Of a DNA stretch of 64,000 nt, positions 634 through 9,600 are shown piece after piece. Each line of letters starts with the position of its first letter. Position 1 is the stretch's first letter. The position numbers and the translations under genes are program-made. The stretch lies in assembly GCA_964234715.1 (NCBI GenBank), contig OZ174286.1; one strand, 5' to 3'. The stretch comes from Podarcis melisellensis (taxonomy: Eukaryota). The notes under the pieces are model-generated. The model saw only the letters and a list, made by a program, of their open reading frames with translations. It was not told where the DNA came from and ran no database searches.

Positions 634-3600
634 GTAAATATAAAGTGTTTTTATCATCCCCATTGTGGTGTAGTGGTTAAGAGCAGTAGACTCGTAATCT
701 GGTGAACTGGGTTCGCTTCCCTGCTCCTCCATATGCTGGGTGACCTTGGGCCAGTCACACTTCTTTGAAGTCTCTCAGCCCCACTCACCTCACAGAGTGT
801 TTGTTGTGGAGGAGGAAGGGAAAGGAGATTGTTAGCCGCTTTGAGACTCCTTAAGGGGAGTGAAAGGCAGGATATCAAGTCCCAACTCTTCTTCTCCTTT
901 GTTTAACACCACTGATTGAAAAATATAGATCAAGATCTGTATAGAAATAGAGATCAAGGTTGGAAACCTGTGGCCCCCCAGCTGTTGTTGGTATGACCAA
1001 TGGTCAGGGATGATGGGAGTTGTAGTCCAACAACCTCTGGAGGTACCACTGTTTCCCCACTCCTGTTGCAGATGATTCACTACCTGATTGCTTGCCCTTT
1101 TTCACTGTTTCTGGTACTTAGGATTAATTCACATGACCAAGCTGGTGTTCAGAGTATGTGGGTTGAGTTGATCTGTAGTGAGTTGGTTCTGCCTTGGTTT
1201 CACACAACAGGCCAAGTTCACAACCTGGCTTTCAGTAACATTTTAATTGGCACTGCTAGTTCCCCCACCCCCTGCCGTGGATTTCAATACAGTGGTACCT
1301 CAGGTTACGTATGCTTCAGGTTACATACTGTGATGGGACGATGAGCTGCTTGTGCGTAAAATGCAAGTCCCTCAGAGTTTGATCAGGCTTTCAAACCTCT
1401 GCCTGTGACGGAGCCCCTCCAGCATGGCTGCGTCAATCACTAGTAGAATCCGAAAGTGGCTGCTTTCGGAAACGTTTCCAACATAAAAGCTCCTTAACGG
1501 AAACACGTCGTCTGGCCTCTCGGCGTGACAGTTTCCGTCGAGGTGTGGGTGTCCCTATAGGAGGTCCTGAGACCTCCCCACTGGTTTCGCTTGAAGCGTC
1601 TCTGAGCCATCCCTCCGACTCACTTTCCCTTGGATTTCTTGCTCGCCCTCTACTGGTTCCCTCTTCCGCTGCTACTGCTCTCTCACCCTCAGTGAGCCTT
1701 TGCGCCTCCGGCGCTTTAGATGTCAGTTCCCTGACATCCACCTCCCCTCCAGGGCCCCCTTCACCCCCTCCCGTCTCCTCTCCTACTGGCGGTGAGGAGG
1801 TAAAACCCTTGAAAGAACCTCCCTCATCTTCCGACGTCGCGAACACTTCCTTCCACTTGTTGCTGTTCCTACTCTCTAGGTACTCTTCGTCATCAGAGTC
1901 CACTCCCTCTTCCAACTCCGACTCCGCGAACCCTTCCATTTCCTCTTCCTCATCGGTGGTGCCGAAATACTCCCTCCTAAACCTTGCTATCGGCTGAGGT
2001 TTCCTCGGGAACCTTTGATGGAACGTTTCTGTTAAAACCTCGTCATTGACTTCCTGCGCACTTACCCAGGTGTTTTCTGACTCCGGTTCCCCTTCCCACG
2101 CCACTAAATACTCCACCTGATTTCCCTTCCACCTGGAATCGAGGATTTCCGCTACATGGTTGCGGCGTTCCCTCTCTTCCAAGGCTGGTCCCCTGACGTG
2201 CTCCCCTTCACCTCCTCCCCTGTATGGTGACAGTAACGACCTGTGGAACACTGGGTGCAATTTCATGTGATTGGGTAATCGGAGTTTGAAAGCTGCCGGG
2301 TTGACCTGCTGAATCACCTCAAAGGGTCCCAATCTTCTGGGCCTCAGTTTCTTACAACCCCCTTTGAACGGCAACCCTTGGGTTGACAACCACACTTGAT
2401 CCCCCACCCTTATGGTTTCACCTTCCCTTCTGTTCTTGTCTGCCTGCTTCTTATATTGTGCCTTAGCCCTTTCTAAGTTGAGCTGGAGCTGCTGATGGAT
2501 GGCTTCCATCTCTTCTACAAAATGTTCAGCCGCTGGGACGCTCCATCTCTCCCCTCCTTCCCCTGAAAATGCCCTGGGGTGACACCCGTAATTAGCCAAA
2601 AAGGGACTCATCCCTGTGGACACATTCTCCGCATTATTGTAGGCAAATTCTGCCAACGCCAACTTTTCGACCCAATCGTTCTCTCTGTCATTGACATAAC
2701 ACCTAAGATATTGTTGAAGAATGCCATTTGCCCTTTCCGCCTGCCCGTTGGTTTCAGGGTGCCGGGCAGTTGAAAAATTGACTTCCACGTGTAACAAGCT
2801 CATGAGCTTCCTCCAGAACCTGGAAGTAAATTGTTTGCCTCGATCTGAGATCACCCTCGAGGGAGCCCCGTGCAACCTAAAGATATGTTCCACAAACAAC
2901 TTCGCCGTTTCTTCCGCTGTGACTGCATGTGAGCATGCTACAAAGTGGCACATCTTAGTTAACAGGTCTACTACTACCATGATGGCTGTTTTCCCCTTGG
3001 ACCTTGGCAGATCCGTCATAAAATCTATTGATATCGCTTCCCAAGGCCGTTCTGGTGTGGGTAAAGGTTCTAATAACCCTGCCGGCGCCCTTCTTTCCCC
3101 TTTGGCTCGCTGACATTGGTCACACCCTCTTACATACTCCCTTACATCTTCCCTCACCTTAGGCCACCAAAATTCCCTGGTAACCAACCACATGGTCTTG
3201 TGTTGCCCAAAATGTCCCGCCGTGGGGCTATCATGCAACTGCTTGAGTACTCTCCCCCTCAATTCACCTTCGGGTATATACAGTGCCCCTTTGTAATACA
3301 ATGCCCCATTTCTTTCCTCAAAACCTCCGGGGCTCTCGCCCTCCCCCCTGAGACCTCTGAGCTTATCCTGGGCATATTCATCATTTTCCGTTTCCTCCAC
3401 CAGTTCTCGTTGCCCCACCATCGCCGCCCCACACACCCAGCGGTCCTCCGGGATGACATGTCTCTCTTCGATCACCCCCTCCCCTTCCCAATATTCTGGT
3501 TTGCGTGAGAGCGCGTCCGCCCTGACGTTTTCTGGGCCTGGCACATAACAAATCTCAAAGTTAAATTTGGAGAATTCCTGTGCCCATCTCACTTGTCGTT

Positions 3601-6600
3601 GGTTGAGCACTCGAGCTGTTCTCCAATACTCTAAATTTTTGTGGTCGGTGCACACTTGCACCTTGTGTTGTGCCCCAATTAATAAATGTCTCCACCTCCG
3701 GAATGCTTCGTGAATGGCAAGTAGTTCCCTGTCATACACCGTGTAATTCCTCTCGGACTTATTCAGCTTCCGCGAGAAGAAGGCACACGGTCTCCACTCC
3801 GACGCACTCCTCCCCGGTTGAAGAAGGACCGCCCCTACCGCCCGGTCGGATGCATCTGTTTCCACTCTCATGGGTTTTCGTAAATCCACATGCAGAAGTT
3901 GTTCTTCCGAGGCGAAAGCCCTTTTCAGTTCTTCAAAGGCTCGATCCGCCTCTGCCGTCCAAACAAATTTCTTCTTGCTGCTGAGACAGTCGGTGATGGG
4001 CGCCGTCAAGTGGGCAAAGTTCTTGATGAACTTCCGATAAAAGTTCCCAAATCCCAAGAATCTTTGCACGTCCTTCTTGGTCTTCGGTGTCTTCCATTCC
4101 AGTACCGCTTGGACCTTGCCTGGATCCATGGCCAATCCCTTGTCTGACAAGCGGTACCCCAGGAATTCCACCTCCTTGGTATGAAACTGGCACTTCTCCA
4201 GTTTCACCCACAGCTGGTTGGCTTGCAGCCTGCCCAACACTTCTCGAACGTCCCTCACATGCTGTTCCTCATTTTCCGAATACACCAACACGTCGTCTAA
4301 AAAGGCCACACAATTCTTGTAGAGCAAAGGTCCCAGAACGTGGTTTATAAAAGCTTGAAAACACGCGGAGCCCCCTTGTAGACCGAAGGGCATAACGAGG
4401 TATTCAAAGGCTCCCAACGGGGTAAACATGGTGGTCTTCCATTCATCTCCCTTCCTTATGCGTATCAGATTGTACGCCCCCCGCAGGTCCAGTTTTGTAA
4501 AAATCTTTCCCTTCCTTACTCTGGTCAAAATGTCATCAATTCGGGGCATAGGGAAAGCCAGGGGCTCCGACACTGCATTGAGGGCCCTGAAGTCACACAC
4601 CAGTCTCGGTTTGTCTGTGTTCTTTTTGTCCACAAAAAACACTGGGCTGCCCCCCACCGCTCGGGACTCTCTGATGAAACCTCGCTTCAAGTTTTTGTCA
4701 ATGAACTCCCTCAGCTCCTGCATCTCCCTGTCTGACATGGCGTACAGCTTGCCTACTGGGAGTTGGGCCCCTGGGAGTAGGTTGATTTGACAGTCAAAGG
4801 GTCTATGCGGTGGCAGTTTGTCTGCTTCCCTTTCGCTGAATACGTTGCTCAGATCTGCGTATTGCGGGGGCACCTTCCCTTTGTCCATCACTTCCATCCC
4901 CGCTAGGGTGACTCTGTCTCCTCCCGAAACCTTCCCCTCCTTGCAGTGTTCTAGGCAATGCGCTGACCCAAAGGAGACCACCCTCTGATGCCAGCCCACT
5001 AGCGGATCGTGTAGCGCCAGCCAGCTCATCCCCAAAATGATGGGCGCTCCTCCCAGGATGGCCACATTAAACGCTATCTGTTCGGTGTGCCTTGCCACTC
5101 TCATTATCATCGGGACAGTCTGTTGGCTAACTTCTCCCCCCAACAGCTCTCTGCCGTCAATCGTAGTCACCTGCAAGGGGTTACTTAAAGGGATAGTCTG
5201 TATCTGGTGCTCAGCTGCAAACTCCTTACTCATGAAATTACAGGAGCTGCCTGAATCCAAAAGCGCCTTGACCTTTAGTGGGTGTCCGTTTGGCAGTTCT
5301 AGTAACACCTCTATCACTAAAGCGGGTCTGGGGGGTTCTGGCATGGGCACTTTCATTGCTCTTTGGCCTGGCTGCTGTGCCCCAACGGTGGCAGCCAGGC
5401 GTTGGCTTTTACTTGCTCCTTGCCTTCCTCTTCCTTTCCCCCAACAGCTCCTGCCATCCCTTGCCATTCCTTTCTTTGTGGGCAAACTCTGGCAAAGTGC
5501 CCTGGCTGTTGGCAGAGATAACATCTCTTGGCGCTCTTTCCCTCCTTCTTCCGCCCTTCACTGGGATTTGAAACTGCGCGCGCCCGCGCTGTTCCAAATT
5601 CCATCGGCTCTGCCGGCGGGAAAGGTGGCTCTGGAATGTCTGGAATGCGGAACTCCCTCCAACGGTCTCCTTTCCCTTCCCGCTTTTCCATAGCCCTCGC
5701 CTCCTGGCGCGCTCCTATGGCCAGCGCAGATTTGGTTAACTGGTCCATAGACTCCGCCCTGGGGCCCCGGGAAAGCTCATCTTTGACGGTTGAAGAAAGC
5801 CCCTCTTCGAAAAGCATTTGGATGGGCTCCGCCGATAGGTCCCACCCCAATTTGTGAATCAACATGGTAAATTCAGTCCAGTACTCACGGACAGATCTGC
5901 TTCCTTGCTGGCAAGCCATTAACTGCCTTCGCACCACCCCCTGCTCAATATCGCTGGAAAACATCAGGTCCATGGCACGAAAAAACTTCCTCGTGTCCTT
6001 TAAGATCTCATTATTCGCTGCCATCAGGGGTCTAACCCAATCTTTCGCCCCGGATTCGAGATGGCCAATCACATACGCCACTCGCGATTCCTCATCGGGG
6101 AAGTCATCAAACTGCAAGTTTAGAGCGTATTGCATCTCTGTTCTAAAGGCATGATAGTTCCTGGGATCCCCCCCGAATTTCTGCACCAATCCTGGCACCT
6201 TTCTGGCGAGCGGGGTGGTTTTCTCCTTTCCCTTTTCTGCATCCTGAGCCCTCCTCTCCTCAAGCCTCGCCGTTTGCAGCGCCAACTGGATCTCCAACGC
6301 CCTGTACCTTTCTTCCAGGCTTGGACCTCCTCCAGCTGCTCCTGCTTCCCCGGTTCCGGCTGGATTGCTCATGATGCTTCTCCCTGCACAAGCTGGCTTT
6401 CGGAGACTTTCGGATTGCTGTGATGGGACGATGAGCTGCTTGTGCGTAAAATGCAAGTCCCTCAGAGTTTGATCAGGCTTTCAAACCTCTGCCTGTGACG
6501 GAGCCCCTCCAGCATGGCTGCGTCAATCACTAGTAGAATCCGAAAGTGGCTGCTTTCGGAAACGTTTCCAACATAAAAGCTCCTTAACGGAAACACGTCG

Positions 6601-9600
6601 TCTGGCCTCTCGGCGTGACAGTTTCCGTCGAGGTGTGGGTGTCCCTATAGGAGGTCCTGAGACCTCCCCACTGGTTTCGCTTGAAGCGTCTCTGAGCCAT
6701 CCCTCCGACTCACTTTCCCTTGGATTTCTTGCTCGCCCTCTACTGGTTCCCTCTTCCGCTGCTACTGCTCTCTCACCCTCAGTGAGCCTTTGCGCCTCCG
6801 GCGCTTTAGATGTCAGTTCCCTGACACATACGCTTCAGGTTACAGACTCCTCTAACCCAGAAATAGTACCTTGGGTTAAGAACTTTGCTTCAGGATGAGA
6901 ACAGAAATACGGAGCCATGGCAGCAGTGGGAGGCCCCATTGGCTAAAGTGGTACCTCAGGTTAAGCACAGTTTCAGGTTAAGAACGGACCTCCAGAACGA
7001 ATTAAGTTCTTAACCTGAGGTACCACTGTAGTAATATTTCATTTTCAATTGTGCCAGAAAGTACATTTGTATAAAAGAGAACATGATGACACATTCTTAG
7101 GCTGTGTGTGGTTGAGCGGAGACGTATAAAAAAATTGGCCATGTATGCATGCTATAGATAATTGCAGACCAGATAAGGAAAGTCGATTATGCAAGGACAT
7201 AAGAGCGTGCTGGATCAGGCCAGTGGCACTTCTAGTTCAGCTTCCTGTTTTCTCAGTGACCAACCCGTTGCCTGTGGGAAACCTGCAAGCAGGACCTGAG
7301 TTAGTGCAAAAAACAATCTTCTCTCCTGCAGGTTCCAGATAATATGGTTTCATATTATCATGGCCCCTTGCAAATTCCTTTAGAAAACCAAGATCATGTT
7401 GATACTGGCTTTCGTTGTAAAGATCTACCAAAATCCATGGCACTTACCACACATCCGCACTTGAGTGGACGTTCAGAATTTGGTCACACACTTGGAATCC
7501 TAAGGACTGGAACCTTTTTTAACAATCAAAAGAGGCAGAAGAGGGGGGTATGATGGATTAACCAAAGATCTGTATCATCCATTGTTTTGTTTCTAAATGC
7601 TAGCCATCCAAATGCTTCTGGGAAGCTTATAAGTTCACTCTTGTTTGCTCCCAGCATCTGTTACTTAAAAGAGAGAGAAAGGGAGATTCTGAGCACAAAG
7701 ATCTCATATTAAAGTGAAACCTGAGATTCTCAAATACATTTCTGAATGTTTATAAAGTAAAAATACACATGCATATAATTTTGAATCAAAATCAGTGCAA
7801 GAACCCACACACCCCAATGCAATTCCTTATTTATGAATATTTAGAGATTTAGCAAGACTTGCACTTTTCCTCTTCTGTTCCATTTGGCGTAGTTGCCCAC
7901 CCCCACCCCCCTTTCAAGCACATACAAATACTGGTTTTAGCCGGACTTTCTGCTTTCTTATTAACCGGCCAAGTTGTCTGGGAACATTTCCCACTTTTTC
8001 ACACTGTCTGTGCCGCTGATCAGATTAAGTAAATCAGATTATGTGGAAGAAGACTGTATAAACAGCTTCAAGGGATAACAGGAAGTGGGCAGACATTTTG
8101 TTTATGTTTTGACGCATCCCTTTCCAGTGGTTGGGCGCAAGGAAATATCTCTGCTGTTAGGGTTGCCAGGGCAACCAGGATATGGGATTTATCCTCGGCT
8201 GAAGCCCAATCTGTCTACGGTTGGATTTGGTCACTTTATTAAACACCTCCCTATGTTGTCTGCATGAAGGGGGGCACCACGTGATTATTGGGGAGTTGGG
8301 GTGCACTCCCGGTCCCCATGCTGCCTGTCTCTGCTGGGGACATCCATATTTTAGTGTGGTTGTCTGTAATGAAGAAGCCCATGCACAAGTAGCCATTGAG
8401 GCTGGCCCATTGAGATAAATGGGGCACTGCCTTACCAACCTCAACCAGCTTACACCTGCCTGCCTTCTTTCTTACATCCTGTCACAGGGTGTCTCTTCCT
8501 GTTCTTGGCTTTGGCTCCCCCTACTGTTGGTCTTCCTGCCGTCTGCCCTATCAGTCCCAATTGAGGACAAACCACCACTGCGATCATCTGCTTCTGCCTA
8601 GGTGTCATGTACTGAGTTGAATAGGATCCAAATGCAGCAGTCTGATTGGTCCTAGAACAATCCAGCAGTATGATTGGTCCACAGGAGCCACTCAATCCAG
8701 CTCCAGATGGAAGTGAATCCACAACCTGATTGGCCTACAGGAGAATCCCGGAATTAGCCAATCACATGCAGCCAATTGTGTAAATAATGTATATAAAGCA
8801 GATATTTTGGGGGAACTTCCATTCCTCCTCACCACTATGAGCTGGATAAAGAGCATGAAATCCACTCTCGACTCCGAGTATATTTCAGTAGGCTTCCAAC
8901 ACAATCGGGAAAAGAATAATTGAGAGCCCCTATCTTTGAACTCCAGGACAAAGCATACCTTTGTGGTAACTTTTCCAAACTGGCTTTCCAACTTGCTTAG
9001 TTTTATTGGACAAAGTGCAGAACATGTGTAGCAAATCTTCAGCTGGCGGTGGATACCCCCAAACAAGTCTGGAACGTTCATGAATTAAGTTTCAAGCACG
9101 GAAGTGTGGTGTTAAATAAAGCTATATGAGACTATTGATTGTCACTTTAGTTTTGGCACAGCGCGGCCTTTCAATATAACTTGGGTGCTGAGCATTGTTC
9201 ACAGTACATGGTGGAGGTAACCAGAACAAACCAGCCATGCCTACTCTTTTTTAAAAACCATGCTCATTTATTTCAGGGAATGGGAAGGCTGTGCTCAATG
9301 CCCATCTGTCCCAGAACAAAGAACCTCTGAAATGTCCCCATGCCACATCCCTACTAATGCTATGGTAGATTTGTTGGGTGCAGAGAGGTTTCTCACATCT
9401 CTTTCCAGTTCAGTCCTTTTAAATGTATTGTGTGGTGGGGGTTGTTGTGTTGTCTTTGTTCTTATTTTTAGCATGCATCTTGTGTTTTTTTTAATATTGT
9501 AATTTTATGCTGTGAGCCGCCCTGAGATCTACGGGTATAGGGAGGCACAAAAAATTAATTAATTAATTAATTAATTAATTAAAAAAAGTAAGCATATTCC

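What the first reader, a model, noticed from the sequence alone, without database searches (positions are those of the whole stretch)
1802..1975. Gypsy integrase tail carries two tandem LEDGF-IBD/TND-interacting-like motifs: possible host-factor tethering of integration
Seen: just after the chromodomain, Pol reads [16 protein letters not shown] (1928-1975) and [18 protein letters not shown] (1802-1855) in an acidic, disordered tail. Established: LEDGF/p75 IBD-binding motifs, also called TND-interacting motifs (in PogZ, JPO2/CDCA7L, MLL1, IWS1), consist of a short helix ending in F, an acidic S/T linker with CK2-type sites, then FxGF. They bind TFIIS-N-terminal-type domains of LEDGF, HRP2 and other elongation factors, and LEDGF steers HIV integration into transcribed gene bodies. 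Inference: this lizard chromovirus may mimic these motifs to tether its intasome to elongation/H3K36me chromatin. That fits its position in an OSBPL3 intron and its degenerate chromodomain. I know of no description of this for a Gypsy integrase, but I could not search the literature.
Basis: partly seen in the sequence, partly recalled or inferred. Interest (0 to 1): 0.9.

Follow-up and report, generated by a model that had tools for sequence, protein, structure and literature searches.

The report
LEDGF-type docking motifs on Gypsy integrase
A very young, intact lizard Gypsy retrotransposon carries two conserved short motifs in the floppy tail of its integrase. They are built like the motifs host proteins use to dock onto the chromatin reader LEDGF/HRP2, so the element may pick landing sites by host mimicry, but binding is untested.

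Summary
Pol residues 1184-1199 (window 1928-1975) and 1224-1241 (1802-1855) each form a unit of aromatic anchor, 8-9-residue acidic S/T linker and [F/M]xGF. They lie in a disordered tail just after the integrase chromodomain of an intact Ty3/Gypsy element on the minus strand, which has identical 408-bp LTRs and a 5-bp target duplication.

The units are not a chance feature of an acidic tail:
- Two units occur in about 3.5e-5 of composition-preserving shuffles.
- They persist in families down to 43-59% identity while the rest of the tail diverges.
- The conserved F/G/F residues use different synonymous codons in different copies.
- None of the 84 relatives with an intact chromodomain cage, out of 123 proteins scanned, has such a unit.

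An Anolis Gypsy family with no chromodomain carries a canonical unit too.

The grammar matches the published TND-interacting / IBD-binding motif definition. Binding to LEDGF/HRP2 and any effect on integration sites remain untested, because no TND sequence was available by reference for a complex prediction.

I found no paper describing this, and a 2023 paper states that no data link LEDGF to LTR-retrotransposon integrases. This scan had already flagged the same motif pair on other copies in this genome (s1-504996, s1-498155 and others).

Verdict: a real conserved motif, a plausible new variant of integrase tethering, with the mechanism inferred.

The parts
6419..6826 (-). 5' LTR (TG...CA, 408 bp)
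   Evidence: 100% identical to the 3' LTR. Boundaries were read from the sequence.
1329..1736 (-). 3' LTR. Its first ~300 nt also encode the last 100 codons of Pol.
   Evidence: The Pol ORF stops at 1433.
6827..6831 (-). Target-site duplication GTATG (upstream copy)
   Evidence: Read from the sequence.
1324..1328 (-). Target-site duplication GTATG (downstream copy)
   Evidence: Read from the sequence.
5353..6372 (-). gag (capsid-like domain plus CCHC knuckle)
   Evidence: ORF. Pfam hits Retrotrans_gag, Ty3_capsid and zf-CCHC.
1433..5524 (-). pol ORF: protease, RT, RNase H, H2C2 zinc finger, integrase core, SH3, chromodomain, tail
2219..2404 (-). Integrase SH3_Tf2-1 domain (aa 1041-1102)
   Evidence: Pfam E=1.5e-18. 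AF2 pLDDT about 90.
2012..2155 (-). Chromodomain (aa 1124-1171). It is folded, but its aromatic cage reads N/W/E instead of Y/W/Y.
   Evidence: Pfam Chromo E=1e-8. AF2. Cage mapping against 123 relatives.
1928..1993 (-). Unit A: anchor segment ending in YF, linker GTTDEEEE, then MEGF (aa 1178-1199)
   Evidence: The more diverged relatives have F at the M position.
1856..1927 (-). Acidic spacer between the units. It is poorly conserved and has an indel in one family.
   Evidence: Alignment. Identity is lower outside the units.
1802..1867 (-). Unit B: anchor W-K-E-V-F, linker ATSEDEGGS, then FKGF (aa 1220-1241)
   Evidence: AF2 predicts a short helix at aa 1223-1227. The unit is conserved in families at 50-86% identity.
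1737..1750 (-). Polypurine tract abutting the 3' LTR. It lies inside the Pol reading frame.
   Evidence: Read from the sequence.

Best explanation
The element is an intact, very recently inserted Ty3/Gypsy chromovirus-type retrotransposon. The disordered tail of its integrase carries two paralogous short linear motifs that are kept by selection on the protein.

Each unit has the architecture of a host TND-interacting motif of the LEDGF/HRP2 class: an aromatic or hydrophobic anchor on a short helix, an 8-9 residue acidic linker with CK2-type S/T sites, and FxGF.

The most likely mechanism is host mimicry. The tail, probably after phosphorylation by CK2, docks into the two hydrophobic pockets and the basic patch of the TFIIS-N-terminal-type domain (the IBD) of LEDGF and/or HRP2. 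These proteins read H3K36me2/3 through their PWWP domain, so the intasome would be tethered to transcribed chromatin. The chromodomain has lost two of its three methyl-lysine cage residues and would no longer do the targeting.

Shown: the presence, disorder, conservation and protein-level constraint of the motifs, and their association with cage loss. Inferred: phosphorylation, the binding partner, and the effect on integration sites.
For: Element:
- Identical LTRs, a target-site duplication, and intact gag and pol.

Grammar match:
- Published definition (PMC9987994): an obligate helix with F/V/L/I, an 8-16 residue acidic linker enriched in G/S/T and phosphorylated by CK2, and FxGF essential for LEDGF/HRP2.
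- IBM consensus (S/E)xFxGF and the validated DPF3a peptide (anchor LF, 10-residue S/T/D/E linker, FHGF) (PMC7337902).
- JIL-1 DFxGFDE binds the fly LEDGF homologue (PMC6877644).

Conservation:
- Podarcis families at 86% and 71% tail identity keep both units.
- A 59% relative keeps both with canonical FVGF and FRGF.
- A 50% relative keeps unit B (FLGF).
- A 43% Podarcis clade (four families, 62 member sequences) keeps a unit at the A position (F[HQR]GF, with the x position free).
- Identity to the 59% relative is 56% in the unit columns and 26% in the rest of the tail.

Protein-level constraint:
- The conserved F, G and F use different synonymous codons in the window, L001 and L002.
- In other species' contigs, the listed differences inside the units are synonymous, K>R or A>E. 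The spacer shows six non-synonymous changes.

Specificity:
- Among 123 Pol proteins scanned, 84 have a three-aromatic cage and no [FLM]xGF in the tail.
- 16 of the 19 with a cage of one aromatic residue or fewer have an [FLM]xGF in the tail.
- Four intact-cage proteins have an [FLM]xGF in a non-acidic context.

Second lineage:
- Anolis carolinensis families (46 and 75 members) lack the chromodomain entirely and carry anchor DIF, an 8-residue linker and FEGF.
- On an RT-to-SH3 tree they sit apart from the Podarcis clade, beside an intact-cage, motif-less family (SH-aLRT 97). This requires at least two changes of state.

Structure:
- The tail is disordered, with a short helix on the unit B anchor.
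Against: - No binding test of any kind was possible. No TND sequence was available by reference, so no complex prediction was run.
- Unit A in this copy and its closest kin has M or L at the first Phe of FxGF. F-to-A at either Phe abolishes DPF3a-HRP2 binding (PMC7337902), and the effect of M/L is unknown.
- The 8-9 residue linker is at the short end of the published 8-16 range.
- AF2 predicts no helix on the unit A anchor.
- Acidic-aromatic motifs are recognised by many other nuclear domains.
- The association with cage loss rests on only two or three independent lineages. One cage-degenerate relative (P0189) has no unit.
- The AU test against a single origin is marginal (p = 0.044), and the group was named after seeing the tree.
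- Profile and sequence searches of the units against PDB chains gave nothing relevant.
- The insertion-site distribution is unknown.
Confidence: 0.45

Rival explanations
1. The units are genuine host-mimicking motifs, but they dock on a different TFIIS-N-terminal-type domain (TFIIS, Elongin A, IWS1, PPP1R10/PNUTS or MED26). The element would then be coupled to the elongation machinery rather than to the H3K36me readers.
For: All TNDs read the same helix plus acidic-linker grammar, and IWS1 carries three units with different TND preferences (PMC9987994). The two units here differ: MxGF versus FxGF, and the anchor contexts R-E-Y-F versus W-K-E-V-F.
Against: FxGF is described as optional for other TNDs, but as essential for, and present in, every known LEDGF/HRP2 partner. 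FxGF is the most conserved part of the units here: G and the last F are invariant in 9 of 9 units.
Confidence: 0.15
2. The units are a conserved acidic-aromatic motif with another job. Candidates are histone (H2A-H2B or H3-H4) binding, a transactivation-like contact with Mediator/CBP/TFIIH, nuclear import, or intramolecular masking of basic DNA-binding surfaces such as the basic LTR-encoded C-terminus.
For: The tail is 29% D/E with interspersed aromatic residues. A strongly basic, conserved C-terminal segment follows it. Many nuclear domains bind acidic-hydrophobic peptides (general knowledge, not tested here).
Against: These alternatives do not predict strict retention of x-G-F with a fixed 8-9 residue distance to an upstream anchor in three lineages. 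The acidic spacer between the units, which would serve such roles equally well, is not conserved.
Confidence: 0.25
3. The resemblance is fortuitous. The tail is a neutrally drifting, low-complexity acidic region, and the shared strings reflect recent common ancestry, or constraint on the RNA/DNA near the polypurine tract.
For: The closest relatives are 71-86% identical in the tail region, so their agreement alone is weak evidence. Unit B lies only 50-120 nt upstream of the PPT.
Against: - The units survive in relatives at 43-59% identity, where the surrounding tail is barely alignable.
- Conserved residues switch synonymous codons.
- The shuffle frequency is 3.5e-5.
- There are 84 intact-cage relatives without any unit.
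- A comparable unit occurs in a separate Anolis lineage.
Confidence: 0.08

Closest known systems
Cellular LEDGF/HRP2 IBD-binding motifs, also called TND-interacting motifs (JPO2/CDCA7L, PogZ, MLL1/KMT2A, IWS1, MED1, ASK, DPF3a; fly JIL-1)
   Same: Location in a disordered region. A hydrophobic/aromatic anchor on a short helix. An acidic G/S/T linker with S/T-x-x-D/E sites. A terminal FxGF followed by acidic or S/T residues. An anchor-to-FxGF distance within the published range.
   Different: The carrier is a retrotransposon integrase, not a host transcription factor. There are two tandem units. One unit in this copy has M at the first Phe. Binding and phosphorylation are untested.
Lentiviral integrase with LEDGF/p75
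   Same: The same proposed tether, and the same predicted outcome: integration into transcribed, H3K36me-marked gene bodies.
   Different: HIV-1 integrase binds the IBD through a pre-formed catalytic-core dimer interface centred on LEDGF D366, not through a disordered FxGF motif (PMC6382798). The interaction is described as lentivirus-specific in the literature cited.
Gammaretroviral (MLV) integrase C-terminal tail with the BET ET domain; Ty5 integrase targeting domain with Sir4; Ty1 integrase C-terminus with AC40
   Same: A short peptide in the integrase C-terminal region that copies a host docking motif and sets target choice (general knowledge; Ty1 in PMC7459421, listed).
   Different: The motif chemistry and the partner differ. 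None of these uses a TND.
Chromoviral chromodomain targeting (MAGGY, Tf1-type chromointegrases)
   Same: The same element class and domain order, with a chromodomain at the integrase C-terminus.
   Different: Here 2 of 3 cage residues are replaced (N/W/E), whereas 84 relatives keep three aromatic residues. The tail units are found only in cage-degenerate or chromodomain-less lineages.

Membership tests
TND-interacting motif / LEDGF IBD-binding motif | Lies in an intrinsically disordered region | tested here: met
   AF2 pLDDT is below 55 from about aa 1181 onward, while the adjacent domains score about 90.
TND-interacting motif / LEDGF IBD-binding motif | Short helix carrying a conserved F/V/L/I anchor | tested here: inconclusive
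   The anchor F is conserved in all units. AF2 gives a helix at aa 1223-1227 for unit B and none for unit A.
TND-interacting motif / LEDGF IBD-binding motif | Acidic linker of 8-16 residues rich in D/E, G and S/T | tested here: met
   The linkers are 8 and 9 residues, each with at least 5 D/E/S/T. The length is held at 8-9 in all lineages. Definition from PMC9987994.
TND-interacting motif / LEDGF IBD-binding motif | CK2-type phosphorylation of the linker that raises affinity | not testable with these tools
   S/T-x-x-D/E sites are present in both linkers (read from the sequence). No phosphorylation data are available.
TND-interacting motif / LEDGF IBD-binding motif | FxGF, required for LEDGF/HRP2 | tested here: met
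   Unit B is FKGF. Unit A is MEGF in this copy, L in two close families, and F in the 59% relative, in P0022 and in the 43% clade. The requirement is therefore met by unit B, and only by a variant form in unit A.
TND-interacting motif / LEDGF IBD-binding motif | Direct, Phe-dependent binding to a TND | not testable with these tools
Chromovirus (Ty3/Gypsy with chromo-integrase) | LTRs, target-site duplication, gag, and PR-RT-RNaseH-IN order with a C-terminal chromodomain | tested here: met
Chromovirus (Ty3/Gypsy with chromo-integrase) | Three-residue aromatic cage for methyl-lysine | tested here: not met
   The cage positions read N, W, E, against Y/F-W-Y/F in 84 relatives.

The most novel reading that the evidence does not exclude
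Squamate Gypsy lineages have replaced chromodomain-based (heterochromatin) targeting with mimicry of the host LEDGF/HRP2 docking motif, possibly more than once: in lacertid lineages with a decayed cage, and in an Anolis lineage with no chromodomain. This would converge on the lentiviral tether through a completely different interface. It would be the first LTR retrotransposon shown to use the TND network.
Probability: 0.3. Interest if true: 0.9.

Novelty: new variant of a known kind. Interest (0 to 1): 0.78.

Why it matters
How LTR retrotransposons of vertebrates choose integration sites is largely unknown. The known tethers come from yeasts, lentiviruses and gammaretroviruses. A 2023 study of fly LTR elements that favour active genes raised LEDGF as a candidate but stated that no data support an interaction (PMC10018349).

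Here is a concrete, conserved and mutable peptide on a young and apparently intact element, with natural controls: sister families with intact chromodomains and no motif. That makes the question directly testable by peptide binding and by comparing insertion landscapes.

If the reading is true, it would show that the disordered TND-TIM network is open to hijacking by mobile elements. It would show that LEDGF tethering evolved independently of lentiviruses. It would also show that loss of a chromodomain cage can go with a switch of chromatin niche.

Tried and rejected
- Profile search of the nine aligned units against all PDB chain sequences: no hit at E up to 10.
- Single-sequence searches with the Anolis unit and with the 59% relative's tail. 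These gave only de novo helical bundles and a papillomavirus E1 acidic tail, at E 0.04-0.8, judged to be chance. Sequence search is simply too weak for such short motifs.
- Protein search with the chromodomain-plus-tail fragment alone: no hits, an effect of the length window and word index. It is uninformative.
- Nucleic-acid constraint near the PPT as the cause of conservation: rejected on synonymous codon switching.
- gamma-ear/GGA-type (aromatic-G-x-aromatic) and FGDF-type motifs were considered from memory and set aside, because the G position differs.
- Homology of position between the Anolis unit and the window's LTR-encoded tail: BLASTP E = 0.075, not significant, so left open.
- Single versus multiple origin of the units: AU test p = 0.044 with a group defined post hoc, treated as unresolved.
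- The OSBPL3-intron context was not verified. The findings index had nothing, and no protein search was left.
- Two key primary papers (PMC6065015, PMC8943916) are not held. The motif definition therefore rests on the authors' review and on PMC7337902.
Full report
**What is there**

The first 7 kb of the window hold a complete Ty3/Gypsy element on the minus strand.
- Its two 408-bp LTRs (1329-1736 and 6419-6826, TG...CA) are identical over their whole length.
- They are flanked by a 5-bp duplication, GTATG.
- gag (5353-6372) has capsid-like and CCHC domains.
- The 1363-codon pol frame (1433-5524) has protease, RT, RNase H, H2C2 zinc finger, integrase core, Tf2-type SH3 and a chromodomain at aa 1124-1171.
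- The pol frame runs through the polypurine tract (1737-1750) and about 100 codons into the 3' LTR.

**The observation**

Each is a unit made of an aromatic anchor (…E-Y-F, or W-K-E-V-F), a linker of 8 or 9 residues made almost only of D/E/S/T/G with S/T-x-x-D/E sites, and then M-E-G-F or F-K-G-F.

The 87-residue tail between the chromodomain and the LTR is 29% D/E. AlphaFold2, run on a 36-sequence alignment, folds the SH3 and chromodomain with pLDDT about 90. It leaves everything after about aa 1181 below 55. One short helix falls exactly on the anchor of unit B, at aa 1223-1227.

Two full units arise in 3.5e-5 of composition-preserving shuffles of the tail. This is a post-hoc pattern, so the figure is only indicative.

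**Is it more than a look-alike?**

Relatives were collected three ways:
- a word-indexed search seeded in the tail;
- an exhaustive phmmer of the SH3-to-end fragment against 1.8 billion representatives;
- a search seeded in the PR-RT part of Pol, which is blind to the tail.

The results were as follows.
- *Podarcis muralis* families at 86% and 71% tail identity keep both units.
- A relative at 59% (Logan contig, L002) keeps both, now with canonical FVGF and FRGF.
- A relative at 50% (ENA contig, L001) keeps unit B with FLGF, while the unit A position has decayed.
- A Podarcis clade at 43% (P0033, P0181, P0183, P0184; 62 member sequences) keeps one unit at the A position, with an S/T-rich linker and F-[H/Q/R]-G-F.

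The spacer between the units carries an indel and many substitutions. Against the 59% relative, identity is 56% in the unit columns and 26% in the rest of the tail.

The nine units align without gaps. G and the last F are invariant, and the middle x is free. The two units look like an internal duplication.

**Level of constraint**

In the window, L001 and L002, the conserved F, G and F of both units are written with different synonymous codons (TTC/TTT, GGT/GGG). Selection therefore acts on the protein, not on an RNA or DNA signal near the PPT.

Near-identical DNA of this stretch occurs in runs of at least eight coded organisms. In contigs of three of them, the listed differences inside the units are synonymous, K>R, or A>E in the linker. 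The spacer shows six non-synonymous changes. That list is truncated by the tool, so it is supportive only.

**Specificity and the chromodomain**

I mapped the three methyl-lysine cage positions and scanned the post-chromodomain tails of 123 Pol proteins: the 115 new hits plus eight clade members already in hand.
- 84 have three aromatic cage residues and no [FLM]xGF in the tail.
- Four have three aromatic cage residues and an [FLM]xGF in a non-acidic context, mostly in chimeric gene models.
- 16 of the 19 with one aromatic cage residue or fewer carry an [FLM]xGF in the tail (the earlier set agrees).

The window's cage reads N/W/E.

The chromodomain is still recognised by Pfam (E = 1e-8) and still folds. 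That such a cage no longer binds methyl-lysine is an inference from what is established for HP1-type chromodomains.

**A second lineage**

Two large *Anolis carolinensis* families (P0223 and P0231, with 46 and 75 member sequences) have no chromodomain at all after the SH3. Their acidic tail carries anchor D-I-F, an 8-residue linker (A-E-P-S-D-E-D-S) and F-E-G-F.

On a maximum-likelihood tree built only from the RT-to-SH3 core:
- the squamate elements form one group (SH-aLRT 100);
- the seven Podarcis motif-bearers form a clade (100) with about 0.85 substitutions per site between its two halves;
- the Anolis pair sits beside a Podarcis family with an intact Y/W/Y cage and no unit (97).

The trait therefore needs at least two changes on the tree. 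Forcing all motif-bearers together costs 20.5 log-likelihood units, with AU p = 0.044. This is marginal, and the group was defined after the tree was seen.

Whether this means two gains or one gain with several losses is open. A weak BLASTP match (E = 0.075) hints that the Anolis unit lies in a different part of the tail, but I could not fetch Anolis DNA to settle it.

**Comparison with what is known**

The authors' review of the TFIIS N-terminal domain defines its ligands by three features (PMC9987994):
- an obligate short helix that anchors F/V/L/I in pocket 1;
- an 8-16 residue acidic linker enriched in G and in CK2-phosphorylated S/T;
- an FxGF that fills pocket 2 and is present and essential in every known LEDGF/HRP2 partner.

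PMC7337902 gives the consensus (S/E)xFxGF. It also gives a validated DPF3a peptide (anchor LF, 10-residue S/T/D/E linker, FHGF, then acidic residues) whose binding to HRP2 is lost on either F-to-A change and is raised by phosphorylation.

PMC6877644 shows the same FxGF-LEDGF-domain contact in *Drosophila* (JIL-1 with JASPer).

The units here meet every sequence-level criterion, with one caveat. Unit A has M (L in two close families) where the first Phe should be, while the more divergent families have F there.

HIV-1 integrase, by contrast, uses a pre-formed catalytic-core dimer surface (PMC6382798). If this element binds LEDGF, it does so the way host partners do, not the way lentiviruses do. 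The nearest mechanistic analogues are integrase C-terminal peptides that copy host docking motifs: MLV with BET, Ty5 with Sir4, and Ty1 with AC40.

**Novelty**

Full-text searches gave no paper describing such a motif on a retroelement integrase. The searches combined:
- TND-interacting motif with retrotransposon;
- LEDGF with LTR retrotransposon, integrase and chromodomain;
- TFIIS N-terminal domain with transposable element;
- FxGF alone;
- LEDGF with retrotransposon, H3K36me3, integration and tether.

The library does not hold most subscription journals, so absence is not proof.

Within this scan the same motif pair had already been flagged on other copies in this genome. Two follow-ups reached the same reading, with binding untested (s1-504996, s1-498155; also s1-509514, s1-514989, s1-505016, s1-508194). 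I treated these as leads, not as evidence.

I cannot say whether the earlier follow-ups made any of these tests.

**What is not shown**

No binding, no phosphorylation and no integration-site bias is shown.
- The OSBPL3-intron context was not verified. One insertion would not bear on targeting in any case.
- Sequence searches of the units against PDB chains were uninformative.

**Verdict**

| Claim | My estimate |
|---|---|
| The units are a real, conserved short linear motif under protein-level selection | about 0.85-0.9 |
| The full chain: they dock on the LEDGF/HRP2 TND and steer integration into transcribed chromatin | about 0.45 |
| They dock on a different TND | 0.15 |
| They are an acidic-aromatic motif with another function | 0.25 |
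| Chance resemblance or neutral drift | below 0.1 |

Noticed in passing
window 1436-1736 (-): Pol reads through the PPT and about 100 codons into the 3' LTR. The basic end of this LTR-encoded part (…L-L-C-W-K-R-F…P-L-S-D-S-x-S-D) is kept in the 71% and 59% relatives, and partly (L-L-C-W-K-R) in the 50% one. It therefore looks like real coding sequence. The scan has already noted this (s1-517319, s1-511079).
   Followed up: partly
P0223 and P0231 (Anolis carolinensis, UniRef): Large Anolis Gypsy families whose integrase ends at the SH3 with no chromodomain, followed by a long acidic tail holding one canonical FEGF unit. The position of the unit relative to the PPT/LTR boundary could not be fixed, because no DNA was available.
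   Followed up: partly
window 1545-1997 (+): A 150-codon S/P/L-rich ORF lies antisense to the acidic tail. It is most simply a by-product of GAG/GAA-rich coding on the other strand.
   Followed up: no
window 1290-1328 and 6827-6990: The element is inserted inside another repeat. Both flanks carry copies of a GTAACCTGA-type unit followed by …GGTACCAC…, so the target was itself repetitive DNA.
   Followed up: no
P0004 (NCBI, Podarcis muralis): A gene model named 'vomeronasal type-2 receptor 26-like' contains an SH3/integrase fragment 83% identical to this element. It is probably an intronic insertion absorbed into the annotation.
   Followed up: no
window 1746-2113, run X16: Contigs of a run guessed to be RNA, from another coded organism, cover the tail and the chromodomain (368 nt, 44 differences). 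This hints at transcription of a related family, but the run type is only a guess.
   Followed up: partly
P0192, P0191, P0043 and other cage-intact relatives: Many relatives with intact chromodomains also continue past a conserved G-[DG]-[SG]-V-M signature into S/D/E-rich tails with CK2-like clusters, but without FxGF. Acidic, phosphorylatable integrase tails may be general in this group.
   Followed up: no
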